Below are positions 5,527 to 61,532 of a stretch of DNA of 64,000 bases, piece after piece; within the stretch, counting starts at the first letter, position 1; the number at the start of each line of letters is the position of its first letter. The notes beneath the pieces are model-generated. The model did no database searches, was not told the origin of the DNA, and saw only the letters and a list, made by a program, of their open reading frames with translations. The stretch spans positions 388,800 through 452,799 of IMG/VR virus record IMGVR_UViG_3300032315_001715. One strand, 5' to 3'. The position numbers were made by a program, and so were the translations under genes.

Positions 5527-5612
5527 TGGAGGAGGGTGATGGCATCGAACCATTGACCTTTCGGTCACCACAGTTTTCAAGACTGCGCAAGGAGCCAACC
5601 TTGGCACCCTCC
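5527..5612 (-). tRNA. tRNA-Ser(TGA), 8/4-type, U73
   Basis: Acceptor GGAGGGTG/CACCCTCC, T-stem ATGG/CCAT, GCAGT CTTGAAA ACTGT. Confidence 0.85.
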
Positions 5613-5699
5613 ATGCGGCTATTTAAGCATATTTTATCGTGATTGTCAAGGAGTGTTCATAGAGACTTCGTTTCGGGGGTATCATCTAGACCGGTATGA

Positions 5700-11944: not shown

Positions 11945-12114
11945 TGGTGCCGGATGAGGGATTTGAACCCCCGACCTTCGGTTTTTCTTGGACTTGCGGG
12001 CTTTAGGCCTTCTGTCCTTCATGGACGTACACAGAAGTAAATTCTCTGCACGGCTCCTGAGATGTTACCCATCACGGAAACAAAACCGCTGCACTACCAC
12101 TGTGCTAACCCGGC
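11945..12114 (-). tRNA. tRNA-Thr(TGT) interrupted by a 95-nt insert (11985..12079)
   Basis: 35-nt 5' part ending GCGGT TTTGT and 40-nt 3' part starting AAACCGA join to a canonical 75-nt cloverleaf. Confidence 0.85.
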
Positions 12115-12196: not shown

Positions 12197-12219
12197 AAGA
12201 AACAATTATTGCAGGCTAC

Positions 12220-12804
12220 TTATCTCCTGTCAACCACAAATGGGTTGAATATGTCGATTGCTTGGTCCCACTGGACCAATTCGTTGGTGCTGCGGTGCTT
12301 GAGGACCAAGCTCATGCACCATCGTCCCTCGTCTGTATCATTAACGATGTTGTGTGGACCTCCAACGTTGACCAAGCTTGGCTGGCCGATGTTGGCCGAC
12401 CATGCCATGTCGCAATCAGCCGGATCCCAGCGGTAGTATTCCGTTCCTATCCGTGTCTTGGCCGTGGTGTATCCTAGACCACCTTTGTTATCATTGTACC
12501 AACACATGCGACTGCTGGCAGCACCGTAGGCCCAGTTCAGCTTGACATGCTCGTCAAGCCTGGAACCATCGGCATGTATGGCGGTTGACCATCTAGGCGC
12601 TGTGTAAAAGATCTCTGCATGATGAACCATGATACCACGCAGTGCAAGCCATCCGTGTATGCGAGGATCAATCTTCTCGACCGGTAGATTCCATATCGTG
12701 GATTTTTGTGGTAGTCCGAACGATTTGATGCCATCCATGGCGTACGTCGTTGCGGTAAATCCGATGCCGATGATCCGTTCATATCTGTTTTTTATCATCG
12801 GCAT
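12220..12804 (-). CDS. Hypothetical cupin/2OG-oxygenase-like protein, paralogue of 14930..15502
   Basis: IHADG..KLNWAYG..PSLVNVGGPHNIVN..RWCMS. Confidence 0.6.
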   Translation of the reverse strand: MPMIKNRYERIIGIGFTATTYAMDGIKSFGLPQKSTIWNLPVEKIDPRIHGWLALRGIMVHHAEIFYTAPRWSTAIHADGSRLDEHVKLNWAYGAASSRMCWYNDNKGGLGYTTAKTRIGTEYYRWDPADCDMAWSANIGQPSLVNVGGPHNIVNDTDEGRWCMSLVLKHRSTNELVQWDQAIDIFNPFVVDRR

Positions 12805-14589: not shown

Positions 14590-14707
14590 TGGCTCCTTCT
14601 GCTGGACTCGAACCAGCAACCACCTGATTAATCTTGGACCTGATGGAGTTGCACCATCCAATCTATTGATCCCACAGTCAGGGGCTCTACCATTGAGCTA
14701 AGAAGGA
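14590..14707 (-). tRNA. tRNA-Asn(GTT) interrupted by a 43-nt insert (14631..14673)
   Basis: CCTGA CTGT | TAA TCAGG restores a canonical arm; U1-A72, G73. Confidence 0.85.
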
Positions 14708-15701: not shown

Positions 15702-15734
15702 AAGTATTTATACGCTATCTTACAGCGTCTGTCA
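15702..15734 (-). promoter_or_regulatory. Overlapping sigma70-like (TTGACA-N17-TATAAA) and late (TATAAATA) promoter
   Basis: Minus strand TTGACA gacgctgtaagatagcg TATAAATA. Confidence 0.7.
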
Positions 15735-15826
15735 AGCACTTCCATGATCCTTCGTGCCAGTTCCACCCACCTTCGAGCATTGCTACCCGGGACGTGCATC
15801 CCATGGGATAAACACCTTGGATTCCA

Positions 15827-16606: not shown

Positions 16607-17179
16607 TTATTTTTCGATAAAATACAGAGCTGTTTGAATGAATTGCTCTTTATCTTTGACACATTCTTTCCATTCTATTCGAAGTGTTTGCCATCCTTGC
16701 TCTAAAAGCCATGCATCTCGTTTTGCATCACTCTCTCTGGTGTTTTCGTGAGTGCCGCCGTCGATTTCAATGCATTTCTTTATTTCTGGCCAAGCAAAAT
16801 CAAGTGAATAAATTCCAAATGGGTATTCCGCAATGTAGTTTTTATTCTCAAATCTTTTATCAATCACAGATTCGAACCACTGCTCTGGATAACTTTTTGG
16901 ACGCCCTTTGAAATTTTTTCCCAAAGTAGGGTATGTCCCCTCCTTCAAACGTCTCAGCATGTGATGTCTGAGCTTGATTTTGGTTTCATCTGAGTGCTTC
17001 TGAGGAGGTCGATGTTTCCTGCTCATCTTTTGAGCTTCGCTTTTAGAACGAGGTGTGAACAATCCATTTTTGATTGCCTTGTTGATCGTGTTCAAGGTTG
17101 GTCCTAATTCTCGCATTGGGACCCCACTATCATATAGGCTCTGTAATTCTTTCCAATTAAACGGAGTTTTGTTTCTCAT
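16607..17179 (-). CDS. Free-standing endonuclease, DUF559/Vsr-like PD-(D/E)xK with NUMOD-like N-terminus
   Basis: YSLDFAWPEIKKCIEIDGGTH..DAKRDAWLLEQGWQTLRI; HSDETKIKL. Confidence 0.8.
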   Translation of the reverse strand: MRNKTPFNWKELQSLYDSGVPMRELGPTLNTINKAIKNGLFTPRSKSEAQKMSRKHRPPQKHSDETKIKLRHHMLRRLKEGTYPTLGKNFKGRPKSYPEQWFESVIDKRFENKNYIAEYPFGIYSLDFAWPEIKKCIEIDGGTHENTRESDAKRDAWLLEQGWQTLRIEWKECVKDKEQFIQTALYFIEK

Positions 17180-17476: not shown

Positions 17477-17529
17477 ACAGCTAGTGATATTTATAGTCTA
17501 TCGCCGGCAAAAAAGCAAGCGATGATTTT

Positions 17530-19510: not shown

Positions 19511-19569
19511 ATAAAACCCAGTAGTTGTTGTTCTTGTTGCATGCTTTATAGCACGCACCGTATTTGGTG

Positions 19570-20244
19570 TCAACGCCTATTTTTTATCGTTCTTCCTTTG
19601 ATCCATCCGACTGGTATAGGATCAGATTTTTTAATTTTTACAGATTTTTGACCATCTGTTATCCACATTGTGTCAAACTGACTATTGGATTTGCCAAATC
19701 CTCGCCCTTTTGATGATTCGGACATTTTAGATCTAGTTTCAGCCGAATGTGTCTTTCCTTTGAAAGATGCAAATATGTCAGGCGTATATTTTGATTTAAT
19801 GGTTTCTTGCCATTTTTTTGAACGATTTGCAACTCTTTCTGTATCTAATAGAAAAAGTCTTAGACCCTCCTTGGCTTTTTCTTCTATCCCTCTAGATTTT
19901 GCTACTTTCATAGCCTTTTGATTTTTTTCTTTTCTTAACGATTCATTTGAATTGATATAACCAAATCCGCCATGTCCTCCTGGACATAAATTATATGTAT
20001 CTGGTCTTGCACACATTTCTTCTGTCACAAGTTCTTTTTCTTTGTCGTTCATTTCTTTTTCACAAGAAAAGACGTGTAAGATTTCTTTGGAAAAATTTTC
20101 AATACCATATTTGTCAATTGCAAGTTTTATGAGCTTGCCAGATCCAAAATATTCATCATTAAGGTCAGCAGTTTTATGCTTTCCTATATAAATCTTGCTG
20201 TTAAGGAGATTAGTAATTTTGTATATTATGAAGAACATAAACAC
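19570..20244 (-). CDS. GIY-YIG homing endonuclease (Seg-like) with NUMOD3 motif
   Basis: IIYKITNLLNSKIYIGKH..YFGSG..YNLCPGG; FKGKTHSAETRSKMS. Confidence 0.9.
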   Translation of the reverse strand: MFMFFIIYKITNLLNSKIYIGKHKTADLNDEYFGSGKLIKLAIDKYGIENFSKEILHVFSCEKEMNDKEKELVTEEMCARPDTYNLCPGGHGGFGYINSNESLRKEKNQKAMKVAKSRGIEEKAKEGLRLFLLDTERVANRSKKWQETIKSKYTPDIFASFKGKTHSAETRSKMSESSKGRGFGKSNSQFDTMWITDGQKSVKIKKSDPIPVGWIKGRTIKNRR

Positions 20245-20272
20245 CCCCGTTTGGAGTATTTATGAAAAAATG

Positions 20273-20343
20273 AGCGGGTAGCGAGAATCGAACTCGCGCG
20301 TCCACCATGGCAAGGTGGCAGGCTACCTCTACATCATACCCGC
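20273..20343 (-). tRNA. tRNA-Gly(GCC), CCA not encoded
   Basis: CCACC TTGCCAT GGTGG; GCGGGTA/TACCCGC. Confidence 0.9.
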
Positions 20344-20581
20344 ATTATATGGTTAGTTATCCATGCAAGGCGCGTCTAATCCAGTTCTGTCCAAGAGGAC
20401 GACCTTCATGTGGGGTCGCGTCGTTCAATGCACCTTGCCTTGGTGCACCTTGCAAGATTGAAATCCCGTGTTCTACGATACTCGGCTGTAGGTGACTAGC
20501 CCACTATATCCTGGACGGTTGAGTCCAGGCCACCGAATGCTACCATGTCACGGGGTCTTTGGTGGGGGTAAGTCCCAGATT

Positions 20582-21169
20582 CTATATCAACCCTAAACTT
20601 TTGAGCTTGGTTTTATCCCATACCTCGCAGACGACATCTGGATATAACTGGCGCCAAAGCTCGAACTTTTCTTTGTTTGCTTTTCGCCAATAACCCTTGA
20701 CCTCTATGATTTTTCCGCAGGATAAAACAAAGTCAGGTCTGTATGACCTATTTTTTGATAACAGGAAAACCTTCTTGCTGTAATCCCATTTGATACCTTG
20801 GCTATCGAGGTAAGACGCAACTTTCACCTCCCAGGATGAATCCATCCTGATGCCATTATAATAACTTTGTCTATCTCCTCTATGTTTGGCGTTATTGTTA
20901 CCTCTCATAGATTCGGATATTTTAGCTTTGGTGTCATCGGTATGTTTCACCAACGAATTGAGCTTTCTGCCTTTTATCTTTAAGGCATGCCCTAGAATCC
21001 TTGAATCTGTTTCCTTGCTAAGTCCTTTGTTCCAGCTAACATGCGCTGTCTTGAGACGTGCTCGATAACCGGGACATTTGTAATAAACTGGTTGGCAGCA
21101 CCACCCGCTCCATTTAGAGCGAGGTGGATACGAAGCGGTGTCTCCGCAATACTTGCATGTGTTGTTCAT
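20582..21169 (-). CDS. Free-standing PD-(D/E)xK endonuclease with NUMOD3-like motif
   Basis: MDSSWEVKVASYLDSQGIKWDY..YRPDFVL..IIEVKGYW; KHTDDTKAKIS; TAAATA 5 nt before ATG. Confidence 0.75.
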   Translation of the reverse strand: MNNTCKYCGDTASYPPRSKWSGWCCQPVYYKCPGYRARLKTAHVSWNKGLSKETDSRILGHALKIKGRKLNSLVKHTDDTKAKISESMRGNNNAKHRGDRQSYYNGIRMDSSWEVKVASYLDSQGIKWDYSKKVFLLSKNRSYRPDFVLSCGKIIEVKGYWRKANKEKFELWRQLYPDVVCEVWDKTKLKSLGLI

Positions 21170-21227
21170 GAAAGTATTTATGCAAACAGTCTGCTCCAAC
21201 CCTCCAACGTTGGCGCTTCCCCAAATT

Positions 21228-21306
21228 TGGTAGACCAGGTGGGACTCGAACCCACGGTTTTTACTGATTAAGAATCAGCTGCCTTGGCCGCTCGGCGCAC
21301 TGGTCT
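21228..21306 (-). tRNA. tRNA-Lys(CTT)
   Basis: GCTGA TTCTTAA TCAGT; A73. Confidence 0.85.
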
Positions 21307-21427
21307 GTGGTATAATGGCCTTAGAACACTCCGCCGGTGCTGCCCTAACCCTTGTTTGCGCTCAAGTCCCCGGTCTACGGCTGCATCTCAACCAGGGAGG
21401 GCTATCTGCTCTCGTCGTGCTCTAACT

Positions 21428-21502
21428 TGGTCTCGCGTGCGGGTGCCGGCCCCGCTACTCCGGGATGAAAGCCCAGTATTTTAGCTGGTAAACTAACGCG
21501 AG
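21428..21502 (-). tRNA. tRNA-Glu(TTC), duplicate of 19207..19281
   Basis: Two differences, both leave G:U pairs. Confidence 0.8.
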
Positions 21503-21518
21503 AAATCTCATTCTAACT

Positions 21519-21598
21519 TGGAGGACCACCAGGGAATCGAACCCTGCTTGTTGCTGCTTCCGCGGTGGGTTTTAGCGCAACAAGAGCCATCGTGGCCC
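21519..21598 (-). ncRNA. tRNA-like RNA lacking D-arm and anticodon loop
   Basis: Acceptor GGGCCAC/GTGGTCC-TCCA, T-arm CAGGG TTCGATT CCCTG, 8-bp stem CTTGTTGC/GCAACAAG around 22 nt. Confidence 0.65.
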
Positions 21599-21608
21599 GT
21601 AAATTTGG

Positions 21609-21616
21609 TATAAATA
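21609..21616 (+). promoter_or_regulatory. T4-like late promoter TATAAATA
   Basis: ggTATAAATAg upstream of the only plus-strand gene in the array. Confidence 0.7.
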
Positions 21617-21652
21617 GATTAAATAGTTTTTTAAGCAACAGGAGAATGTCGC

Positions 21653-22282
21653 ATGTCTTATGAAATTTTCATTAAAAGTCAGTCATACACTCGACAATCA
21701 CCTAATCTTTCTAAGCTTGGGTTTGATTTTGTAAACCATGATAGCAAAGCTGAATATCAAAAAATTCAGAACCTTCTTAGCACTGAATATTTAATTCTTG
21801 GCGAAAGTATGATAACCTTGCAAGAAAAATACAGCATCCCAAGTTCACGGACCTTACATGATTTGTTCAAACTATTTGATATTGAAGCACGATCATTTAG
21901 TAATGCTAATAGGTTAGCATTGACAACGGAGCGATCCACAATGCCGTGTTGTTACAAATACAAGACAGGATGGCATACAACTTGGGATCAAAAACAAGTC
22001 TTCTTGCGAAGTTCGTATGAATTTGATTATGCGAAAATTCTCGATGAGTCAAAAATACCGTATGAGGTGGAAGCACTTCGAATCAAATACTATTCCTCAA
22101 CCGAGGAGAAATATCGTATAGCTATACCCGATTTTTTACTACCTTGCAGTCATACCATAGTTGAGATCAAATCTCAATTTACCTACGATAGTCAACAAAT
22201 GAAAGACAAGTTCTGTGCATATCAAGCACTCGGATATAAAGCGATTTTGATTCTAGAGGGCAAAGAAACCTCTCTAGAATGA
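21653..22282 (+). CDS. Free-standing endonuclease (TnsA-N-like PD-(D/E)xK)
   Basis: LRSSYEFDYAKILD..YE..IPDF..IVEIKS; inverted relative to the array. Confidence 0.7.
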   Translation: MSYEIFIKSQSYTRQSPNLSKLGFDFVNHDSKAEYQKIQNLLSTEYLILGESMITLQEKYSIPSSRTLHDLFKLFDIEARSFSNANRLALTTERSTMPCCYKYKTGWHTTWDQKQVFLRSSYEFDYAKILDESKIPYEVEALRIKYYSSTEEKYRIAIPDFLLPCSHTIVEIKSQFTYDSQQMKDKFCAYQALGYKAILILEGKETSLE

Positions 22283-22285
22283 AGT

Positions 22286-22419
22286 TGGAGGACCCCGGTG
22301 GTAACGATCCACTTGCGGGCGGGTTAATCTTGGCATAGAGGACTTGCACCTCATGTGACCTGGTTGTCATCTGCCTAAAGTCCGCTGCCGGCACCTGCCT
22401 GGCTATACGCTCGGGGTCC
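22286..22419 (-). tRNA. tRNA-Lys(TTT), 8/4-type body, interrupted by a 50-nt insert (22327..22376)
   Basis: GGACCCCG/CGGGGTCC-TCCA; GCGGA CTTT | TAA CCCGC; T-arm GTGG ATCGTTA CCAC. Confidence 0.7.
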
Positions 22420-22468
22420 TTGTTATCTATTGTTTAATGGGATTTCCTTGGTAATGCAAGGAAAAACT

Positions 22469-22541
22469 TGGAGGACCGTGTGGGAATCAAACCTTCCCGG
22501 CCGGATTAAGAGCCCAGCTGAGCCTCAGGCTGCAATGGTCC
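22469..22541 (-). tRNA. Atypical tRNA-Lys(CTT): 6-bp anticodon stem, 3-nt variable loop, U73
   Basis: GCTGGG CTCTTAA TCCGGC; small D-arm; weak T-stem. Confidence 0.6.
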
Positions 22542-22638
22542 ATCTAACTCTCGGAAGAGCCGCACGCTCTCCATTCCCGTGTCGCCCAGGGACCCTTATC
22601 GGACCCTTCTGGTGCGGTTAGGCAACGCGGGGTATTCT

Positions 22639-22715
22639 TGGTAGCCCCACCGGGATTTGAACCCGGATTTCCCGCTTGAGAGGCGAGTGTTCTAGACCGC
22701 TTAAACTATGGGGCC
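22639..22715 (-). tRNA. tRNA-Glu(CTC)
   Basis: CTCGC CTCTCAA GCGGG. Confidence 0.9.
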
Positions 22716-22763
22716 GTATGGTTGGTTCACAAACTACCGTGCTTGTGAATGTGTTTGATCTGT

Positions 22764-23351
22764 TTAACGAGGAGCAAACGGATCTATTATCACCGGGCAA
22801 TCGCCTCGTTGCATGATGTTTTCATCATGTAGATCAAAATCAATTGCTGAATTGGTACTAACAACATTAGCCAGTAGCTCGATTGCATGTAAGAAATCCG
22901 GCCATTTTTTAATGAAATGCTCGATGTGAGATTTGAGTTTCTCGTCAGTCATGTTGCTGAGATAGTCTCGCCATTTAGGCTCGTCGATGTATCTCAAAAA
23001 CCAATCAGTTGCTATATGATCAGGGTCGGTTCGAACATATTCCCAGGGTGACAGCATTTCTAATCTCAATGCACGGATACCTGGGACCAAAGTAACCGGT
23101 AATCCTCTAAACTTTGGAAAATGTGGATTATCCTGATGTTTTCGGGCTAGTTCGACAAATTTAGCGTAACCTATATCTGCCTCGTCGTACAGCTTTAGAA
23201 CATAATTCAAGTTCGGATGTTGCCAAACACTGCCAAATGTGCCGTCTCCCAGCATTTCGAATCCATGCTTGAGAAGCTTTTTCTTCGCGCTGTCTGTGTT
23301 TGTGATGTCTTGTCGCAGGCTATCTGCGCCCACAAGTTCATTGAGTTTCAT
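22764..23351 (-). CDS. Protein-kinase-like fold enzyme
   Basis: LGDGTFGSV, VLKLY, DLHDENIM, VIIDP. Confidence 0.8.
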   Translation of the reverse strand: MKLNELVGADSLRQDITNTDSAKKKLLKHGFEMLGDGTFGSVWQHPNLNYVLKLYDEADIGYAKFVELARKHQDNPHFPKFRGLPVTLVPGIRALRLEMLSPWEYVRTDPDHIATDWFLRYIDEPKWRDYLSNMTDEKLKSHIEHFIKKWPDFLHAIELLANVVSTNSAIDFDLHDENIMQRGDCPVIIDPFAPR

Positions 23352-23363
23352 GATGCTATTTAT

Positions 23364-23438
23364 TGGTCAGCGTGGGGAATTTTGCGATCCCGGCCTCCAG
23401 GCTCCCGACCTGGCACTCTTCTCCTGAGCTACACGCTG
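23364..23438 (-). tRNA. tRNA-Pro(GGG), C33/A37
   Basis: CCAGG TCGGGAG CCTGG; C1-G72, A73. Confidence 0.75.
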
Positions 23439-23445
23439 TTGTAAA

Positions 23446-23520
23446 TGGTCAGGGAGGGGAATTTCGAAATCCCGGCTTCCAGGTTCCAGGCCTGGCACTC
23501 TGCCTCTGAGCTACTCCCTG
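23446..23520 (-). tRNA. tRNA-Pro(TGG), C33/A37
   Basis: CCAGG CCTGGAA CCTGG. Confidence 0.8.
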
Positions 23521-23530
23521 ATGTTGTTAG

Positions 23531-23604
23531 ATGCGGAGGATGGATTCGCACCATCGACCTCTTGGTTATGAGCCAAGCGAGCTACTAGACTGCTCCACTC
23601 CGCA
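23531..23604 (-). tRNA. tRNA-Met(CAT), initiator-like D-arm, CCA not encoded
   Basis: TGCGGAG TGGAGCAG..CTTGG CTCATAA CCAAG. Confidence 0.8.
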
Positions 23605-23611
23605 ATAAACT

Positions 23612-23688
23612 TGGCGATCCTAGAGGGATTCGAACCCCCATTCTCCGGTTTCGTAGACCAGCGCTCTATCCAGTTGAGCCATAGGATC
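23612..23688 (-). tRNA. tRNA-Arg(ACG)
   Basis: Loop CTACGAA. Confidence 0.95.
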
Positions 23689-23695
23689 AAATAAT

Positions 23696-23772
23696 TGGTG
23701 GACGCGTCTGGATTCGAACCAGATGGGGTAGCGAACCCCGTCGCCATAGCTTGATACCTACCAAGGAAGCCC
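23696..23772 (-). ncRNA. tRNA-like RNA (possible degenerate Ala-CGC)
   Basis: Perfect T-arm and ACCA, G3:U70, hairpin GGGG TTCGCTA CCCC, poor acceptor pairing. Confidence 0.5.
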
Positions 23773-23776
23773 ATAT

Positions 23777-23847
23777 TGGTGGACCCGACGGGAATCGAAC
23801 CCGCCTGCATCACGCCCGTGATTGGCTTAGCGTTTTACCCCATGTCC
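23777..23847 (-). ncRNA. tRNA-like RNA with 4-nt loop in place of anticodon
   Basis: GGACATG/CGGGTCC-ACCA, T-arm GCGGG TTCGATT CCCGT, ATCAC-GGGC-GTGAT. Confidence 0.5.
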
Positions 23848-23922
23848 ACACCATGTTGTGCGTGGTACTCGATCTCCCAACAGCTTTGAACTGAGAGATT
23901 GGAAGCATGGGCAACGCTAACC

Positions 23923-23999
23923 TGGCGATCCTGGAGAGATTCGAACTCCCAACCTGCGGCTTCGAAGGCCGACACTCTGTCCAGTTGAGCTACAGGACC
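23923..23999 (-). tRNA. tRNA-Arg(TCG)
   Basis: Loop CTTCGAA. Confidence 0.9.
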
Positions 24000-24004
24000 A
24001 ATAT

Positions 24005-24080
24005 TGGCGCACATGACGGGAATTGAACCCGCCTAAACCTGTTAGACAGACAGGTGTTCTCACCAGAGAACTACATGTGC
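24005..24080 (-). tRNA. tRNA-Asp(GTC), U37
   Basis: CCTGT CTGTCTA ACAGG. Confidence 0.85.
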
Positions 24081-24087
24081 ATATCAG

Positions 24088-24163
24088 TGGTGCCGGCGGT
24101 TGGTTCCGCCCCAACTCCTCCTGCTCTTCAGGCAGGCGCTTCTACTAAGTTAGCTTCACCGGC
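24088..24163 (-). tRNA. tRNA-Phe(GAA)
   Basis: CCTGC CTGAAGA GCAGG; T-loop GGCGGAA. Confidence 0.85.
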
Positions 24164-24168
24164 AAAAA

Positions 24169-24240
24169 TGGAAGCGGGAGAATGAGTCGAACATTCGTAG
24201 GAAAGTTTATGAGACTTTCTGGACACCGTGTCTTCCCGCT
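24169..24240 (-). tRNA. tRNA-Met/Ile2(CAT), tiny D-loop
   Basis: AAAGT CTCATAA ACTTT. Confidence 0.7.
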
Positions 24241-24247
24241 GTAAACT

Positions 24248-24338
24248 TGGTGTGTAAGGTGGGATTCGAACCCTTCGCCCAGCGCGCGTTTTACAGCATC
24301 AGGGTTACTGCCATCCAGCTGCTGCTGGAGCCTCACAC
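24248..24338 (-). ncRNA. tRNA-like RNA, 6-bp D-stem, disrupted anticodon arm
   Basis: GTGTGAG/CTTACAC-ACCA; TCCAGC-AGCA-GCTGGA; TTCGAAT loop. Confidence 0.5.
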
Positions 24339-24350
24339 ATAAAACTAAAT

Positions 24351-24449
24351 TGGCTCTTTGTGATGGGTGCTGCCCCCACGTTGTCTGGGCCCTTGCATGG
24401 GACCTCTCCATACCTACCGGGTCGCGAACGCCAGCGATACACACAAAGA
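24351..24449 (-). ncRNA. tRNA-like RNA with 8/5 acceptor/T geometry
   Basis: TCTTTGTG/CACAAAGA-GCCA; T-arm GTGGG GGCAGCA CCCAT; extra segment before an imperfect anticodon arm. Confidence 0.5.
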
Positions 24450-24456
24450 TCAAAAC

Positions 24457-24530
24457 TGGTACCGGCTGCAGGTAACGCTCCTGCCTCGAACATCGTTATG
24501 AGCAATGTCGGGTCGCTTGACCAAACCGGC
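24457..24530 (-). tRNA. tRNA-Met/Ile2(CAT)
   Basis: CATTG CTCATAA CGATG; T-loop AGCGTTA. Confidence 0.75.
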
Positions 24531-24671
24531 TTAGCAACAACGTGGCCCAACAGAACTACACCGTCTGGGGGTGCCTCTTGGAGGACTCTATGTCCTTGCA
24601 TTTTTTGCCATGTCATGCCAGCGTTCTGCGCCTTATCGTTGCCGCTGCGTATGCATGCTCTATGGCTTATT

Positions 24672-24747
24672 TGGGGTGACCGACGGGTACTGCCCCCGCT
24701 TGGATGGTTTCACAGACCACCGTCCATACTTACTGACTCCGGCCACC
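24672..24747 (-). tRNA. tRNA-His(GTG) with encoded G-1:C73
   Basis: GTGGT CTGTGAA ACCAT; G-1 and C73 present. Confidence 0.85.
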
Positions 24748-24889
24748 ATGTTAATGTACCCTGCCCGGGCTGTACCCAACAATAGGTGGGGCCTTGGCTT
24801 CTCGGTGCTAGGGTTATTTGTTTTCCTTGACCACGCTGGCCATTGGCCTTTCCCTACTTTTGTCATATCGGTAGTGGTTCTAAGGAACT

Positions 24890-24963
24890 TGGTTGGCCTG
24901 GATGGGATTGAACCATCATCGGTCGATTATCGGTCGACTGCTCTACCATTGAGCTACAAGCCA
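24890..24963 (-). tRNA. tRNA-Ile(GAT), C33
   Basis: GTCGA CCGATAA TCGAC. Confidence 0.85.
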
Positions 24964-24967
24964 GCAT

Positions 24968-25039
24968 TGGTTACGATTGGCGCTCACCGACCTAACCCGG
25001 GTTCACAGCCCAGCGAAGCGATGCGGCACTCTAATCGCA
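24968..25039 (-). tRNA. Degenerate tRNA-His(GTG)
   Basis: CTGGG CTGTGAA CCCGG; weak D/T arms; A73. Confidence 0.5.
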
Positions 25040-25042
25040 TAT

Positions 25043-25130
25043 TGGCAGAAGTGACAGGGTTCGAACCTGCTCAGGCGTTAGCTCACTGGTTTTGGAGACC
25101 AGCCCGTCTCTCCATCTACGGCGCACTTCC
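25043..25130 (-). tRNA. tRNA-Trp(CCA) with 15-nt variable region
   Basis: CTGGT CTCCAAA ACCAG; GGAAGTG/CACTTCT, G73. Confidence 0.8.
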
Positions 25131-25138
25131 ATAAAACT

Positions 25139-25210
25139 TGGTGGGATGCGGTGGAGTTTAACCACCCTCGACACTGCTACCAGTGCTCAGCCACCCGGCT
25201 GTTCCATCCC
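25139..25210 (-). ncRNA. tRNA-like RNA with shortened anticodon loop
   Basis: GGGATG/CATCCC-ACCA; GCACTG-GTAG-CAGTGT; T-arm GGTGG TTAAACT CCACC. Confidence 0.55.
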
Positions 25211-25216
25211 ATAAAC

Positions 25217-25307
25217 TGGTGGAGGGCTTTGGAGTCGAACCAAACAATGTGTTTTGCCGTAAACATTCATGGCTGGATGATGCCCGCACCACGCGAGCAA
25301 GCCCTCC
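25217..25307 (-). ncRNA. Type II tRNA-like RNA with 6-nt anticodon loop (Leu-like, A73)
   Basis: GGAGGGC/GCCCTCC-ACCA; 6-bp D-stem; TCAT-CCAGCC-ATGA; long V-arm; TTCGACT. Confidence 0.55.
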
Positions 25308-25313
25308 GTAAAT

Positions 25314-25389
25314 TGGTGGAGCATGTCGGTTCTGCCCCGACTACCTCCGCATTGCAAATGCGGCGCTCTCCTGATTGAGCTAATGCCCC
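25314..25389 (-). tRNA. tRNA-Ala(TGC)
   Basis: CCGCA TTTGCAA TGCGG; G3:U70; T-loop GGCAGAA. Confidence 0.9.
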
Positions 25390-25397
25390 AGTTAACC

Positions 25398-25495
25398 TGG
25401 CACCGGATCATGGATTCGAACCATGCAAGCGACTGTCCGTACTTCATCTGAGTCGCGCGCTTTTTGGATTGGGTTCACCAGCTCCCTCATCCGGT
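25398..25495 (-). ncRNA. tRNA-like RNA, anticodon arm replaced
   Basis: ACCGGAT/ATCCGGT-GCCA, normal D- and T-arms, GCGACT/AGTCGC stem instead of anticodon arm. Confidence 0.55.
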
Positions 25496-25504
25496 ATGTT
25501 ATTT

Positions 25505-25600
25505 TGGTGCATCGCCCGATGTCCGACTCGGCTCTTCCAACAACACCTTGCCTAGGCAACGTCGTTGGACGTTTTATCCGCTACTAAACTAGCCCGATGC
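25505..25600 (-). ncRNA. tRNA-like RNA with extended anticodon arm capped by TTGC-CTAG-GCAA
   Basis: GCATCG/CGATGC-ACCA; D-stem GTTT/AAAC; 9-bp TCCAACGAC/GTTGTTGGA. Confidence 0.5.
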
Positions 25601-25613
25601 ATATACAATATAT

Positions 25614-25698
25614 TGGTGGGAGTGGTAGGATTCGAACCTACTCACCCAAAGGAACGGATTTACAGTCCGCCGCCGCTCTCCAACTCAGCCGCACTCCC
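25614..25698 (-). tRNA. tRNA-Tyr(GTA)
   Basis: GCGGA CTGTAAA TCCGT; type II; A73. Confidence 0.95.
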
Positions 25699-25964
25699 AT
25701 GAAACCATCTGCGAAACAGCGCAACACGCTGCTTGGCGGATGGTTCCTAACTCGGGGGTGTTGCGCTTACATAACGCAACACCCCGTCATTTCTTCTTAC
25801 ATGCCGGGACCTAAGTGGATGCTTGGCCCAGTTGCGCCGTGGTTCCTGTGCCGCGATGCGGACAGTCAGCACGAAACTCCTGGAGTTCCAAACGATCCGC
25901 ATGGTTTCCCAGCAACTTATCGTTTCCTGATTCGATTTTTAAACAGCACAACTTTGAAAACAAT

Positions 25965-25995
25965 AAAAAACCCCGGTAAGCTGTTGCTTCCGGGG
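25965..25995 (-). terminator. Intrinsic terminator (attenuator) upstream of the tRNA array
   Basis: CCCCGG AAGC-AACA-GCTT A CCGGGG TTTTTT. Confidence 0.9.
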
Positions 25996-26041
25996 CCTGT
26001 CCACTTGTTTTGATCCAATGATCAATCTAGGTGGCAGACCC
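25993..26041 (-). promoter_or_regulatory. Antiterminator helix overlapping leader ORF end and terminator 5' arm
   Basis: GGGTCTG-CCAC (26041..26031) pairs with GTGG-A-CAGGCCC (26004..25993): 11 bp, one bulge. Confidence 0.75.
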
Positions 26042-26104
26042 TCGTGTATCAGGCTTTTGGGCCCAATGGCTAAACAGTTCGACGCGATAATTCATTGTAA
26101 TCAT
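26027..26104 (-). CDS. 25-aa attenuator leader peptide MITMNYRVELFSHWAQKPDTRGSAT
   Basis: Below ORF-track cutoff; lies between promoter and terminator; AAGGA 14 nt upstream; 19 of 20 amino acids. Confidence 0.75.
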   Translation of the reverse strand: MITMNYRVELFSHWAQKPDTRGSAT

Positions 26105-26138
26105 TGTTGAAGAGAAAATCCTTTTTGTCTCGTGCAGT

Positions 26139-26168
26139 TATTTATACACGCTTTATTTAGCGTGTCAA
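26139..26168 (-). promoter_or_regulatory. Promoter of tRNA array: TTGACA-N16-TATAAA overlapping late TATAAATA
   Basis: Minus strand TTGACA cgctaaataaagcgtg TATAAATA. Confidence 0.75.
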
Positions 26169-26293
26169 CCACTTTCTGCCGTTGAATTGGTATTATTTCA
26201 ACCTTTTCCGTGCAAAGCGTGATCAACTCCGCCGTGCCATGTGTTTACAACGGTATGGCAAAGCTGTCAACCGTGTTTTTTGGCGTTTGATCG

Positions 26294-26497
26294 TTAGCAA
26301 CGATAGTAGCAGCGTCCACCGTAATATGGACGTGGTGCATAATAGGACCGAGGTGCGTAATAGGGCCGAGGTGCCACATAAACTGGCGGCCTATGGACGA
26401 TCACCGGTGCAGGCGCCACATAGTACGGATCGGCCGGATAAACCGCACATCCGGGGAGGGCAACGATCAAGCATGCTGCTAACAGGAACTTTTTCAT
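26294..26497 (-). CDS. Small Pro/Tyr/Arg-rich putative lipoprotein
   Basis: MKKFLLAACLIVALPGC lipobox, YYAPR repeats. Confidence 0.7.
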   Translation of the reverse strand: MKKFLLAACLIVALPGCAVYPADPYYVAPAPVIVHRPPVYVAPRPYYAPRSYYAPRPYYGGRCYYRC

Positions 26498-26505
26498 GCA
26501 ATTAT

Positions 26506-26775
26506 TTACCGACACACGCGATACGATACATATTGTTTCAGATAGTGGTCGTATCTGTTTTCCCAATAGCACGTTGGACGATACCGATGTGGTTCATAAT
26601 GGTATCTCGGCGGGGCATAATATCGCGGAGGCTCGTGATATCTATGTTGATAGTGGTGATGATGGGGACGATCGTATCGCCGACGGTGATCATGATATTG
26701 GGCAGCGGCATCCGCCGTTCCCAATCCTAGAGTGATCACCGTTGCTGTGATCAGCAGCTTGCCCAAACGGTTCAT
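26506..26775 (-). CDS. Small secreted His/Tyr/Arg-rich protein
   Basis: Signal peptide ending ADA; C-terminal C..VCR. Confidence 0.7.
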   Translation of the reverse strand: MNRLGKLLITATVITLGLGTADAAAQYHDHRRRYDRPHHHHYQHRYHEPPRYYAPPRYHYEPHRYRPTCYWENRYDHYLKQYVSYRVCR

Positions 26776-28691: not shown

Positions 28692-30047
28692 ATGAGCATT
28701 TACAACTATCCTGTCACTGGATTACCTGGTCCAACTGGTATCACGGGTGCGATCGGTCCAACCGGAAATACCGGACCAACCGGAAATACTGGACCAAGTG
28801 GCATCAGCTTCACCGGGCCTACCGGTGCAACTGGCGCCGATTCCACGATAACCGGGCCTACCGGTGCAACCGGTGATTCTTTCACCGGACCAACCGGCGC
28901 GACCGGATCTGATTCAATGGTAACCGGTCCTACCGGCGCGACGGTTACTGGTCCCACGGGAGAACGCGGTCCAACCGGTGCGACCGGCCGAGCTAGCACG
29001 GTTGCTGGTCCCAGCGGTCCGACCGGACAGCGAGGTTTCACCGGCCCGATCGGGCTGCGTGGTGCAACAGGTCCGTCGGGCGTAACGGGTTCGACCGGAC
29101 CATTTGGTGAGGGCAGCACGGGTCCGCAGGGTGAGGTTGGTCCAGAAGGACCGACGGGTCCCAGCGGTGCAGGCAGCACGGGACCTTCGGGTGCCACCGG
29201 ACCAGCTGGGGGTCCTACTGGATCCCCAGGATCGACCGGTACTACCGGACCGACAGGTCGAGCAGGTACCAGTTTCACCGGTCCAACAGGTTCACAGGGC
29301 ACCATTGGAGCACAGGGACCAACCGGTGCGACCGGTGCCCAGGGAGTGCAGGGCCTGACCGGGTCACCATCGACCACACCAGGACCAACCGGTCCGCAAG
29401 GATCGCAGGGCAATGCCGGTGCAACAGGACCAACTGGGGCAAGTGGTGCTACTGGTCCGCAGGGATTGATCGGAAATACCGGTCCACAGGGTGTGCAAGG
29501 CCCACAGGGCAATGTTGGTGCCACGGGCGCTATCGGTACAACAGGTGCCACGGGCGCTACCGGTACAACCGGACCGCAGGGTGTGCAGGGGTCACAAGGC
29601 AATCTAGGATCAACCGGGACCACGGGTGCTACCGGTGCTACCGGTGCTACCGGCCCAACAGGGCTGCTAGGATCAACAGGTCCACGGGGGTCACAGGGTA
29701 ATCTAGGTGCCACTGGATCAACCGGATCGACCGGGCCAACCGGCGTGTCAAGCTATCCAACATCTAGATCCCAGGTAACCACATCGACATGGAATGCGGT
29801 GATCACCGATCAATACCTCGGCGTGACCTACTCTGGTAACGTAACCATTAATCTTCCCACGGGAGTTGATCAAAAGGGATTGATAATCAAGGATGAAAAC
29901 GGGTCTGCTAACAGCAATCCCATCACCTTGGTGCCGAACGGTTCCCAGACCATTGACGGTCAATCGTCGGTCAGCATTAACAACAGCCACGGTGCCGCAA
30001 CGTTATGGTTCCACAGCGGTGTTTGGCATGTGATAAGCAAGGCATGA
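28692..30047 (+). CDS. Collagen-like (G-X-T) virion fibre protein
   Basis: About 350 aa of GPT/GAT triplets; C-terminal fibre domain [19 protein letters not shown]. Confidence 0.85.
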
Positions 30048-60833: not shown

Positions 60834-60860
60834 TTTGGATGTTTCCTTGCGATGACATAT

Positions 60861-61532
60861 TTATAGACCGTACCTTCCGCGATAGGCGTTGAAGTTTTGT
60901 TGTATCTCTGACCGTGACAATGCTCGGTTATAGACTTGGGCAGAGGAAATCCTGCCATTGAAATATCTACCTCCGCCGATGGGGTCCTCTGCTAATGAAA
61001 GTCCGGGAAAGGTAAACGATGATGCTGCGTGAGAATTGGTAGCAAAATTATTATTTAGGTATAATGTTGCAGATGTCGTTGTTGTGCTAATTGCCACCAT
61101 GCTCCATTGGTTGTTCGGAACTATCAGTCCAGAAATCCAATTGTATGTTGTGAGCGATGACCAATTGTATCCCAATTGATTTGATGTACCGGCAAATCCA
61201 AGTCCAACACCGTATGCTGCGGCACCGCTCCTAGACATGCAGATCCCGTTGACGCCACCGTGAAATACCGCGCTGTATATCCAACAGATCATGGAATACT
61301 GAGAAACGGTAGGAGTAAAGCTGGCTATGCTGGTGGATTGCGTAGAGCCGTTAAAGGTGAAATATCCACCCGTGGTGCTATACGTTGGCGTACCTACCAG
61401 TGTTCCATTGCGGCCATTACCACTCAAATCCGCCCAGGTGGTGCCAGATCCCGGATAGCTACGAGGATTTGCAGCATCCGCCAACATCAACAGGTCGTTG
61501 TTTACAACACTGGCTCCGTGTGCAAGGGTCAT
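60861..61532 (-). CDS. LamG/concanavalin A-like domain protein
   Basis: DAANPRSYPGSGTTWADLSGN..FNGRISSAQVYNRALS. Confidence 0.85.
   Translation of the reverse strand: MTLAHGASVVNNDLLMLADAANPRSYPGSGTTWADLSGNGRNGTLVGTPTYSTTGGYFTFNGSTQSTSIASFTPTVSQYSMICWIYSAVFHGGVNGICMSRSGAAAYGVGLGFAGTSNQLGYNWSSLTTYNWISGLIVPNNQWSMVAISTTTTSATLYLNNNFATNSHAASSFTFPGLSLAEDPIGGGRYFNGRISSAQVYNRALSRSEIQQNFNAYRGRYGL

What the first reader, a model, noticed from the sequence alone, without database searches (positions are those of the whole stretch)
25965..26168. Pan-amino-acid leader-peptide attenuator controlling a phage tRNA array
Seen: in transcription order, a promoter (TTGACA-N16-TATAAA plus TATAAATA), a 25-codon ORF MITMNYRVELFSHWAQKPDTRGSAT (26104..26027), an intrinsic terminator (25995..25965, ending T6) and then about 50 tRNA genes on the same strand. 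Residues 2-19 are 18 different amino acids in a row (about 5e-6 under uniform usage: 20!/(2!*20^18)); only Cys is missing from the peptide, and every codon is readable by a tRNA in the array. The last codons (GGGTCTGCCAC) pair over 11 bp with GTGGACAGGCCC, which includes the terminator 5' arm; a weaker 1:2 helix (GGCCC/GGGTC) is also present. Known: trp/his/thr attenuators use this layout but with runs of one amino acid. Inference: a ribosome that finishes the leader masks the antiterminator and the array stays off; a stall at roughly codons 2-18 from loss of almost any aminoacyl-tRNA (starvation or host anticodon nucleases) allows read-through. That would be a general tRNA-depletion sensor. 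I know of no description of it but could not search. Weak point: the SD-like AAGGA is 14 nt from the ATG.
Basis: partly seen in the sequence, partly recalled or inferred. Interest (0 to 1): 0.96.

Follow-up and report, generated by a model that had tools for sequence, protein, structure and literature searches.

The report
Pan-amino-acid leader upstream of phage tRNAs
A 450-kb lake phage and at least 18 relatives keep, just ahead of their tRNA genes, a strong promoter, a tiny gene whose roughly 25 codons use almost every amino acid once, and a terminator that competes for pairing with the end of that gene; this is the layout of a ribosome-operated switch that could raise tRNA output whenever any charged tRNA runs short.

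Summary
The promoter, the 25-codon ORF and the terminator sit exactly where stated. The 18-residue run without a repeat is the longest in all six frames of the window. The unit is conserved in 19 distinct sequences (about 12 lineages) of uncultured huge phages. In each contig that extends beyond the element, a same-strand tRNA array follows. The ORF stays open through in-frame indels, although the peptides are only 16-48% identical between lineages. Each peptide still holds 16-20 different amino acids, against about 13.5 expected. Tests that fix the conserved residues give p of about 1e-6 to 1e-10. The last codons form a helix with covariation, and its 3' strand shares 1-6 nucleotides with the terminator's 5' strand. 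The best reading is a ribosome-mediated transcription attenuator with a new kind of leader: no codon runs, but one codon of nearly every amino acid. The function is inferred, not shown. Internal promoters limit control to the first 16 or so tRNAs. The proposed 1:2 helix is not conserved. The overlap with the terminator is short in several members. I found no prior description.

The parts
26139..26168 (-). Promoter: -35 TTGACA (26168-26163), conserved TAAATAA in the spacer, and -10 TATAAA overlapping a T4-late-like TATAAATA (26146-26139)
   Evidence: Sequence. TTGACA is invariant in 17/17 main-family members and the -10 is nearly so. TATAAATA is enriched in the window, 5 matches against 1.6 expected.
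26105..26133 (-). 5' UTR with conserved AAGGA (26123-26119) and TTCAAC (26111-26106) before the ATG
   Evidence: AGGA-N7-9-TTCA-N0-4-ATG is kept in all members, including the distant L062 and L340. The AGGA-to-ATG spacing of 11-14 nt is longer than the 5-11 nt seen at the phage genes that have an SD.
26027..26104 (-). Leader ORF of 25 codons plus TAG; 19 different amino acids
   Evidence: The ORF is open in all 19 distinct homologues, with indels of 3, 6 and 9 nt.
26048..26067 (-). P0 hairpin inside the ORF (Trp-codon UGGG side paired with Pro-codon CCN side); a candidate pause or anti-antiterminator hairpin
   Evidence: It appears in the MFE of nearly every member folded on its own. Compensatory variants include UGGGC/GCCUA, GUUGGG/CCCAAC, CUGGG/CCCAG, UGGGCA/UGCCCA and CAGGC/GCCUG. 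It is only 57-63% paired in the CM alignment.
26031..26041 (-). P1 5' arm, formed by the last four to five codons and ending 1 nt before the stop codon
   Evidence: The G-run is kept although the encoded residues vary among G, R, W and E.
26010..26025 (-). P2 hairpin directly after the stop codon
   Evidence: The shape is conserved with unrelated sequences in every member.
25993..26004 (-). P1 3' arm; its last 3 nt are the first 3 C's of the terminator stem
   Evidence: P1 is 81% paired across 20 sequences, against 17-58% when the partner is slid. Seven of 12 pairs carry double changes.
25965..25995 (-). Intrinsic terminator: CCCCGGAAGC, loop AACA, GCUUaCCGGGG, then U6
   Evidence: 94% paired across the family. 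Unique in the window. The stop-to-terminator distance is 29-31 nt in the 14 members where the script measured it.
25699..25960 (-). Conserved structured spacer RNA between the terminator and the first tRNA
   Evidence: Conserved at DNA level. It has 4-5 hairpins and 19 of 58 pairs are compensatory. No Rfam family matches.
20236..25698 (-). First tRNA transcription unit (Tyr, Ala, Trp x2, Ile, Met x3, Phe, Asp, Arg x2, Pro, Glu, Lys, Gly, plus two ORFs) up to a terminator-like site at 20264-20236
   Evidence: The only other minus-strand sigma70-like match between 25965 and 19573 is a weak one at 23226, TTGGCA-N16-TATGTT, 9 of 12.
19545..19573 (-). Internal sigma70-like promoter before tRNA-Asn, with no leader; similar ones lie at 15735-15707, 12233-12205 and 5649-5621

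Best explanation
This is a ribosome-mediated transcription attenuator at the head of the phage's tRNA array. Its leader peptide is built to contain about one codon of nearly every amino acid instead of a run of one. RNA polymerase starts at a consensus promoter and transcribes a roughly 30-nt 5' UTR and the 25-codon ORF. If the leading ribosome crosses the ORF without delay, it sits on the last codons and the stop while the polymerase makes the next 60 nt. The 5' arm of helix P1 is then inside the ribosome, so the C-run is free, the full terminator stem forms next to the U-tract, and a leader RNA of about 165 nt is released. If the ribosome is held up anywhere in roughly codons 1-17, P1 and P2 fold as soon as their 3' strand emerges. 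The same happens if the ribosome never loads. P1 then takes the first 1-6 nt of the terminator's 5' strand, the stem base next to the U-tract cannot close, and the polymerase reads on. It continues into the structured spacer RNA and the first 16 or so tRNA genes. Because the sensing part of the ORF holds 15-18 different residues in 18-20 positions, the transit time samples almost every aminoacyl-tRNA species. The outcome would be a feedback loop that keeps tRNA supply matched to demand during infection, for example under starvation, host tRNA cleavage or codon mismatch. Shown here: the anatomy, its conservation, the covariation, selection for an open frame and for residue diversity, and the genomic context. 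Inferred: translation of the ORF, polymerase pausing at P0, the direction and size of the switch, and the physiological signal.
For: (1) The unit is conserved at 62-79% DNA identity in relatives. In all but one it lies downstream of the exonuclease gene (mostly with AAA_28), and wherever the contig extends far enough it lies upstream of a same-strand tRNA array. The promoter and terminator are nearly invariant. (2) The ORF is open in all 19 distinct members, has a fixed start context, and shows only in-frame length changes. Its stop lies a few nt after the P1 arm, and the terminator starts 29-31 nt later in the 14 members measured. (3) The peptides are 16-48% identical between lineages, whereas the neighbouring proteins are 55-70% identical. 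Synonymous to non-synonymous codon differences are 60:116. The peptide sequence itself is therefore weakly constrained. (4) Diversity is nevertheless kept at 16-20 distinct residues. The null means are 13.5 for random peptides with phage composition and 12.2 for windows of real proteins. Column shuffles give 15.4 +/- 0.36 against an observed 17.9, with 0 of 20,000 shuffles reaching it. With consensus residues fixed, the Fisher p is 2.5e-10 for phage composition and 1.6e-6 for uniform composition. Without the discovery sequence these become 2.3e-7 and 1.6e-4. Only 2.7% of 17,624 short ORFs in the fetched loci reach 17 distinct residues. F, H, M, Q, R, S, T, W and Y are present in 19/19 members, and the rare residues (F, H, W, Y) at about one copy each. 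The repeats fall mostly in the P1-arm codons. (5) P1 is 81% paired against 17-58% when slid, with 26 double-change cells against 11 +/- 3 in shuffles (0/500). The whole structure has 22/31 pairs with compensatory changes. Every member folds on its own into P0 plus P1(P2), with z scores from -3.2 to -5.7. (6) The overlap with the terminator is kept even when the sequence changes. In L062 the shared strand is CCCUCC, and GGAGGG occurs both in the ORF and in the terminator 3' arm, giving a 6-nt overlap. (7) Ribosome-masking partition functions mostly behave as the model requires. (8) In the window and eight other members, the scan found no further sigma70-like promoter within 400 nt after the terminator. 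In the window, the next strong one lies at 19573, with only a weak 9-of-12 match at 23226 before it.
Against: There are no expression, ribosome-occupancy or termination data. The P1/terminator overlap is only 1-2 nt in L005, L017, L164, L086 and L328. There the equilibrium model changes only the outermost 1-2 terminator pairs, and the L164 outer pair stays near 0.2 in every state. L014 with a ribosome at the stop, and L062 in the free state, also do not fit the simple model. One codon per amino acid should be much less sensitive than the 2-7 codon runs of classical leaders. L062, L020, L014, L017 and L164 have a sigma70-like promoter after the terminator, and the array has internal promoters, so read-through is not the only route to tRNA expression. 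The AGGA is 11-14 nt from the ATG. Cys is absent in 15 of 19 members and Asp in 7. The free leader is predicted to be antiterminated in most members, unlike the trp leader.
Confidence: 0.5

Rival explanations
1. It is an independent small gene. A strongly transcribed mRNA of about 165 nt encodes a 23-47 aa peptide, or acts as a dual-function small RNA, and ends at a constitutive terminator. P1 and P2 are a 3' stabilising structure. The tRNAs are made from other promoters or by leakage.
For: It has its own consensus promoter and a strong terminator. A second sigma70-like promoter follows the terminator in L062, L020, L014, L017 and L164. Internal promoters sit directly before tRNAs. The terminator overlap is small in several members. 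A partly conserved F-x-R-W...P pattern exists.
Against: The peptide is weakly constrained: 16-48% identity and a 60:116 synonymous to non-synonymous ratio. The conserved W and P codons are explained by the RNA hairpin P0. The peptides match no family convincingly in Pfam, PHROGs or NCBIfam; the best E-values are 0.1-0.2. This reading does not explain why residue diversity is maintained, why the stop codon is locked to P1, or why P1 shares nucleotides with the terminator through sequence change. In nine members the scan found no other sigma70 promoter in the 400 nt after the terminator, ahead of the first tRNAs.
Confidence: 0.22
2. It is a translation-dependent switch that senses something other than aminoacyl-tRNA supply. 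Candidates are a nascent-peptide arrest responding to a small molecule (TnaC- or Erm-type), or overall ribosome availability or inhibition. In this reading the residue diversity is incidental or serves another purpose.
For: It has the same anatomy as the attenuator model. Conserved aromatic, Arg and Pro positions recall arrest peptides. The free RNA is predicted to be 'on', so any loss of translation would induce it.
Against: Arrest peptides need a conserved sequence, whereas this peptide drifts to 16-25% identity and changes length to 36-47 aa. The maintained one-of-each composition has no role in such a model.
Confidence: 0.15
3. It is a non-coding RNA element, or simply a promoter plus terminator, and the ORF is an accident.
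For: There is strong RNA structure (z -4.0). The SD spacing is poor.
Against: The ORF is open in 19 of 19 distinct members across about 12 lineages. It has a conserved ATG context, indels only in multiples of three and a stop codon at a fixed structural position. The third codon position is the most variable, 110 differences against 64 and 78. The residue diversity is far beyond random.
Confidence: 0.05

Closest known systems
Leader-peptide transcription attenuators of enterobacterial amino-acid operons (trp, his, thr, leu, pheA, ilv)
   Same: Both have a promoter-proximal ORF of 14-32 codons. The ORF's 3' part belongs to a helix that competes with an intrinsic terminator. The stop codon is placed so that a terminating ribosome masks the antiterminator strand. 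Both have a multi-hairpin leader (the his type has three stacked hairpins) and release a short leader RNA.
   Different: This leader has no run of regulatory codons; instead almost every amino acid appears once. The regulated genes are tRNAs rather than biosynthetic enzymes. The element lies in a phage. The overlap with the terminator is shorter. The untranslated leader is predicted to read through rather than to super-attenuate, except in L062.
pheST (pheM leader) attenuation, a leader-peptide control of a translation-apparatus gene
   Same: A leader-peptide attenuator reports charged-tRNA supply to genes of the decoding machinery.
   Different: pheM senses one amino acid through Phe codon runs and controls a synthetase, not tRNA genes. 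This comparison rests on my own knowledge and was not tested here.
T-box riboswitches
   Same: Both use the charging state of tRNA as the physiological input and a terminator/antiterminator choice as the output.
   Different: T-boxes bind one specific uncharged tRNA directly and have no ORF. No T-box or any other Rfam family matches this region.
Antibiotic-responsive leader ORFs (ermC, cat, msrD, vmlR type)
   Same: A ribosome stalled in a short leader ORF remodels downstream RNA and relieves a terminator or sequestering hairpin, so it senses impaired translation in general (see PMC6851288 and PMC10314930 for examples).
   Different: Those depend on specific nascent-peptide motifs and a drug. 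This peptide sequence is not conserved, but its composition is.
rnTrpL/peTrpL of Sinorhizobium (attenuator RNA and leader peptide with functions in trans)
   Same: The released leader RNA and peptide could have second functions (PMC6614838, PMC7298713). This keeps the small-gene rival compatible with attenuation.
   Different: There is no sequence relationship, and any trans function here is pure speculation.

Membership tests
Ribosome-mediated (leader-peptide) transcription attenuator | Short ORF with start signals directly after a promoter and before the regulated genes | tested here: met
   A 23-47 codon ORF with a conserved AGGA...TTCA...ATG context is present in 19/19 members. Translation itself was not tested.
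Ribosome-mediated (leader-peptide) transcription attenuator | Intrinsic terminator between the leader ORF and the regulated genes | tested here: met
   A 10-11 bp GC-rich stem plus U4-6, 94% paired across the family. The terminator starts 29-31 nt after the stop in the 14 members measured.
Ribosome-mediated (leader-peptide) transcription attenuator | Alternative helix that shares nucleotides with the terminator 5' strand (antiterminator) | tested here: inconclusive
   P1 is conserved with covariation, and its 3' strand takes 1-6 nt of the terminator strand. The overlap pairs are G:C in 14-19 of 20 sequences (all 20 pair at one position), and L062 shows three-way covariation. The overlap is only 1-2 nt in five members, and its effect on termination is unknown.
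Ribosome-mediated (leader-peptide) transcription attenuator | The antiterminator 5' strand lies in the last codons, so a ribosome at the stop masks it | tested here: met
   The stop codon lies a few nt after the P1 5' arm in the aligned members. Masking restores the terminator in the folds of nearly all members.
Ribosome-mediated (leader-peptide) transcription attenuator | Runs or enrichment of codons for the regulating amino acid | tested here: not met
   There are no runs. The rare residues average about one copy each and the commonest (Ser, Thr) about two. This is the feature that makes it a variant rather than a plain member.
Ribosome-mediated (leader-peptide) transcription attenuator | Upstream hairpin acting as pause signal or anti-antiterminator (the 1:2 helix) | tested here: inconclusive
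The P0 hairpin is conserved in individual folds but only 57-63% paired in the CM alignment. Only L062 is predicted to terminate when untranslated.
Ribosome-mediated (leader-peptide) transcription attenuator | Read-through responds to aminoacyl-tRNA supply | not testable with these tools
   This needs reporter assays, in-vitro coupled assays or transcriptome data.
T-box riboswitch or any curated RNA family | Match to a covariance model (Stem I specifier, T-box motif, and so on) | tested here: not met
   Rfam 15 returned only tRNA hits at gathering score, and nothing relevant at E<=5 in 25300-26300.
Known small-protein family | Profile match in Pfam, PHROGs or NCBIfam | tested here: not met
   No significant hits for five divergent leader peptides; the best E-values are 0.1-0.2.

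The most novel reading that the evidence does not exclude
This is a general aminoacyl-tRNA supply sensor. The leader ORF has been selected to carry one codon of nearly every amino acid. Shortage of any single charged tRNA, whether from starvation, host anticodon nucleases or codon mismatch, then delays the ribosome and switches on a phage tRNA operon. That would give the virus homeostatic control of the decoding capacity of the infected cell.
Probability: 0.4. Interest if true: 0.92.

Novelty: new variant of a known kind. Interest (0 to 1): 0.85.

Why it matters
Why phages carry large tRNA sets, and how they deploy them, is an old open question. Recent work ties phage tRNAs to escape from host tRNA-cleaving defences (PMC10264068, PMC11555353). 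A cis-acting element that measures decoding of all amino acids and feeds back on tRNA gene transcription would be the first known regulator of phage tRNA supply. It would also be the first leader peptide whose selected property is composition (one of each) rather than a codon run or a peptide motif. The element uses a consensus sigma70-type promoter and an intrinsic terminator, so it should be directly testable in laboratory E. coli or in cell-free systems. If it works, it would also serve as a compact reporter of global tRNA charging.

Tried and rejected
1. DNA search of 50,697 cultured-phage records with the 1.2-kb region found no match. The nearest cultured phages share only 37-42% protein identity, so no laboratory relative is available.
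2. Scans of viral and genome contigs with the terminator pattern returned mostly unrelated terminators. After HMM filtering, only contigs already known were true members.
4. Protein search with the 47-aa L020 leader found only a near-identical copy. The 36-aa L062 query was too short for the tool.
5. RNAalifold on the plain MAFFT alignment found only the terminator. P1 needed register-aware inspection and a covariance-model alignment.
6. A long-range pairing of ORF codons 9-11 with the terminator loop covaries between group A and L013/L014/L164 (AGCUGUU:AACAGCU against GCAAUUU:AAAUUGC). It is absent in L005, L017 and L169, and is not better than shuffles in most members. It is left as unproven.
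7. I considered the conserved TTGACA about 25 nt after the terminator in the main family as a second promoter. No acceptable -10 follows it in most members, and the window has TTTAAA there. It is more likely part of the spacer RNA.
8. I considered chance and rejected it.
9. Literature searches found no description of such a leader. The library is incomplete, so this is absence of evidence only.

Full report
WHAT IS THERE

The window is part of IMG/VR contig IMGVR_UViG_3300032315_001715 (452,799 bp). A 31-kb contig carries an identical copy of the region. It is an uncultured huge myovirus-like phage. No DNA match exists among 50,697 cultured-phage records, and the best protein identities to cultured phages are 37-42%.

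On the minus strand the order is as follows.
- An RNase_T-type exonuclease gene (28183-27383).
- An AAA_28 gene (27414-26818).
- Two small secreted-looking ORFs.
- A roughly 600-nt gene-free stretch.
- 40 tRNA genes (34 by ARAGORN, 6 more by Rfam), interspersed with homing-endonuclease-like ORFs.

- TTGACA at 26168-26163.
- TATAAA/TATAAATA at 26146-26139.
- AAGGA at 26123-26119.
- ATG at 26104 and TAG at 26029-26027.
- The terminator at 25995-25965.

The 18-residue run without a repeated amino acid is the longest in any frame of the window; the next independent run is 15.

CONSERVATION

Homologues of the exonuclease were collected and their loci were fetched. These show that the up154-exonuclease-AAA_28 order is shared, and that a same-strand tRNA array follows.

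The 'intergenic' stretch itself aligns at 62-79% DNA identity. The aligned block runs from the -35 hexamer to the end of the terminator and on into the spacer before the first tRNA.

In the 17 distinct main-family sequences, four things are invariant or nearly so:
- the -35 hexamer;
- most of the -10;
- an AGGA...TTCA...ATG start context;
- the terminator (CCCCGG...TTACCGGGG plus a U-tract).

Two more distant members were found by geometry or pattern (L062, L340), and one by a covariance model (L020). L062 and L020 sit ahead of tRNA arrays; the L340 contig ends 318 nt after the terminator and no tRNA is found on it. One relative, L086, is included in the alignments, but its terminator register was not handled correctly in the ribosome-masking script.

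THE ORF IS MAINTAINED; THE PEPTIDE IS NOT

All 19 distinct members have an open frame from the aligned ATG to a stop codon placed a few nt after the same RNA helix arm. Lengths are 23-28 codons, with 36 and 47 in two distant members. All length differences are multiples of three.

Between lineages the peptides are only 16-48% identical. The flanking proteins are 55-70% identical.

Within close groups, differences by codon position are 64/78/110. Synonymous to non-synonymous codon differences are 60:116. This indicates a translated frame under weak constraint on residue identity.

The peptides match no Pfam, PHROG or NCBIfam profile with any significance.

RESIDUE DIVERSITY IS THE CONSERVED PROPERTY

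Each peptide contains 16-20 different amino acids.

The expected values are much lower.
- Random peptides with the phage's composition average 13.5 (sd 1.5).
- Windows of real proteins average 12.2.
- P(>=19 distinct in 25 residues) is about 1e-4.
- Of 17,624 short ATG ORFs in all fetched loci, 2.7% reach 17 distinct residues and 0.16% reach 19, with the family's own copies included.

Several tests address shared ancestry.
- Shuffling residues within alignment columns among ten lineage representatives gives 15.4 +/- 0.36, against an observed mean of 17.9. None of 20,000 shuffles reaches the observed value.
- Fixing every consensus residue and randomising only the variable positions gives combined p = 2.5e-10 with phage composition.
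- The same test gives p = 1.6e-6 with uniform composition, the most lenient null.
- Leaving out the discovery sequence gives p = 2.3e-7 and 1.6e-4.

Amino acids move between positions while staying present. Asp, Glu, Ile, Val, Leu and Lys occupy different columns in different lineages.

F, H, M, Q, R, S, T, W and Y occur in 19 of 19 members, and the rare ones (F, H, W, Y) at about one copy each. Cys occurs in only 4.

The part of the ORF upstream of the last six codons holds 15-18 different residues in 18-20 positions in the main family. Repeats fall mostly in the last codons.

The distant L062 leader (36 aa) and L020 leader (47 aa) each contain all 20 amino acids, with p = 8e-4 and 1e-2.

RNA STRUCTURE

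Each member, folded on its own from codon 12 to the C-run, gives the same architecture.
- P0, a hairpin inside the ORF, pairs the Trp-codon UGGG side with the Pro-codon CCN side.
- P1(P2) is a long stem. Its 5' arm is the last four to five codons, its internal hairpin P2 follows the stop codon, and its 3' arm abuts the terminator.
- The z scores are -3.2 to -5.7.

P1 changes sequence while staying paired. Variants of the distal part include CCAC/GUGG, GUCA/UGAC, ACCU/AGGU, AUCA/UGAU, AUCGC/GCGAU and UUGUC/GACAA.

On a covariance-model alignment of 20 sequences:
- the whole structure is 78% paired, against 68% in shuffles;
- 22 of 31 pairs have double changes;
- there are 69 double-change cells against 33 +/- 4.5 in shuffles (0/500);
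- slid controls give 20-49% pairing.

P1, including four pairs that use the terminator's first C's, is 81% paired, against 17-58% when slid. That alignment was fitted to the structure, which favours it. The unfitted MAFFT alignment already gave 81% against 21-59%.

The G-run that opens the P1 5' arm is kept although it encodes G, R, W or E in different members, so the constraint is at RNA level.

In L062 the shared strand is CCCUCC. Both the ORF arm and the terminator 3' arm read GGAGGG, giving a 6-nt overlap with three-way covariation relative to the CCCC/GGGG of the main family.

DOES THE GEOMETRY WORK AS A SWITCH?

I computed partition functions with 30 nt masked to imitate a ribosome.
- With the ribosome at the stop codon or at codon 20, the inner five of the six outer terminator pairs form with p of about 1 in all but two of the 17 main-family folds (L014 and the mis-registered L086). 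The outermost pair ranges from 0.2 to 1.0.
- In the free RNA, or with the ribosome at codons 5-15, the outer 2-4 pairs mostly drop to 0-0.6 in group A, L330, L013 and L019. A few positions do not follow this, for example L171 at codon 10.
- In L005, L017, L164 and L328 only the outer 1-2 pairs drop, and L164's outer pair is low in every state.
- L062 behaves like the classical trp leader. It terminates when free, antiterminates with a ribosome at codons 5-10, and terminates with a ribosome at or after codon 30.

These are equilibrium estimates only.

WHAT CAN IT CONTROL?

In the window, no strong sigma70-like promoter lies between the terminator and 19573; the only other match is a weak one at 23226 (9 of 12). 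A terminator-like site lies at 20264-20236. The unit fed by this promoter therefore holds the spacer RNA and about 16 tRNAs.

Further consensus promoters without leaders sit 10-90 nt before tRNAs at 19573, 15735, 12233 and 5649. The element therefore cannot govern the whole array.

Nine members have no recognisable promoter within 400 nt after the terminator; five do.

The promoter combines a sigma70-type -35 and -10 with TATAAATA. That motif also lies a few nt before many ORFs of this phage and resembles T4 late promoters (my own knowledge). The unit may therefore be transcribed throughout infection.

VERDICT

The anatomy is that of a ribosome-mediated attenuator. The comparative data show selection on exactly the features such a device needs: an open frame, the stop position, the competing helix and the terminator. 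They also show selection on a feature no known attenuator has, which is near-complete amino-acid coverage without runs.

I rate the attenuator reading at about 0.5 and the specific 'any-aminoacyl-tRNA sensor' reading at about 0.4. The main rival is an independent small gene or small RNA with a constitutive terminator, at about 0.2.

I found no prior description in the searchable literature.

Two weak points matter most. The overlap with the terminator is short in several members. No expression data of any kind exist.

Noticed in passing
window 25699-25960 (-): The stretch between the leader terminator and tRNA-Tyr is a conserved structured RNA. It has 4-5 hairpins, and 19 of 58 predicted pairs carry compensatory changes. 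It matches no Rfam family. Two sequence types exist among relatives, one starting TTTGACAATTGAATCAGGA and one starting TTTGGTyACCCAGGGCCAGGA.
   Followed up: partly
window, e.g. 26139-26146, 15705-15712, 17488-17495, 60858-60865, and upstream of many ORF starts: TATAAATA or TAAATA lies 6-12 nt before many start codons. There are 5 exact TATAAATA matches against 1.6 expected. This looks like a T4-late-type promoter motif, and many genes lack a Shine-Dalgarno sequence.
   Followed up: partly
window 19545-19573, 15707-15735, 12205-12233, 5621-5649 (-): Consensus sigma70-like promoters lie inside the tRNA array, each 10-90 nt before a tRNA gene and without any leader ORF.
   Followed up: yes
window 20582-21199, 19570-20244, 16607-17179 (-): Homing-endonuclease-like ORFs sit between the tRNA genes: Phage_endo_I plus NUMOD3, SegE-type GIY-YIG plus NUMOD3, and DUF559.
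   Followed up: partly
window 14593-14707 and 11948-12114 (-): Two tRNA genes found only by Rfam are 115 and 167 nt long, so they probably carry introns or insertions. Their anticodons are uncertain (possibly His and Thr).
   Followed up: partly
L012:5374, L013:11342, L080:13457 (approximate starts): Several relatives encode a tRNA with anticodon CTA (an amber suppressor) just upstream of the leader element. The leader stop codon is TAG in group A, L017, L330 and L086. In L017, suppression would carry ribosomes through the terminator.
   Followed up: no
leader ORFs of all members: Phe, Tyr, His and Asp codons end in T in 60 of 61 cases, against about 65% in the phage's long ORFs. Tyr, His and Asp (with Asn) are the queuosine-tRNA amino acids; Phe is not. 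One relative (L328) has a QueC-like gene in its tRNA region.
   Followed up: partly
window 25698-24091 and relatives L005, L155, L066, L157: The first tRNAs after the leader are usually Tyr, Trp, His and Phe. These residues (with Arg) are among the best conserved in the leader peptide.
   Followed up: no
window 28692-30047 (+): A 451-aa ORF is made almost entirely of collagen-like Gly-X-Y repeats.
   Followed up: no
window 26294-26572 and 26506-26775 (-): Two overlapping small ORFs lie directly upstream of the leader promoter. They have signal-peptide or lipobox-like N-termini and Pro/Tyr/His-rich repeats. It is unclear which of them is real.
   Followed up: no
window 5527-5613 (-): Rfam scores this tRNA as tRNA-Sec (52 bits, gathering score 47), whereas ARAGORN calls it tRNA-Ser with anticodon TGA. 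It is most likely an ordinary long-arm Ser tRNA.
   Followed up: no
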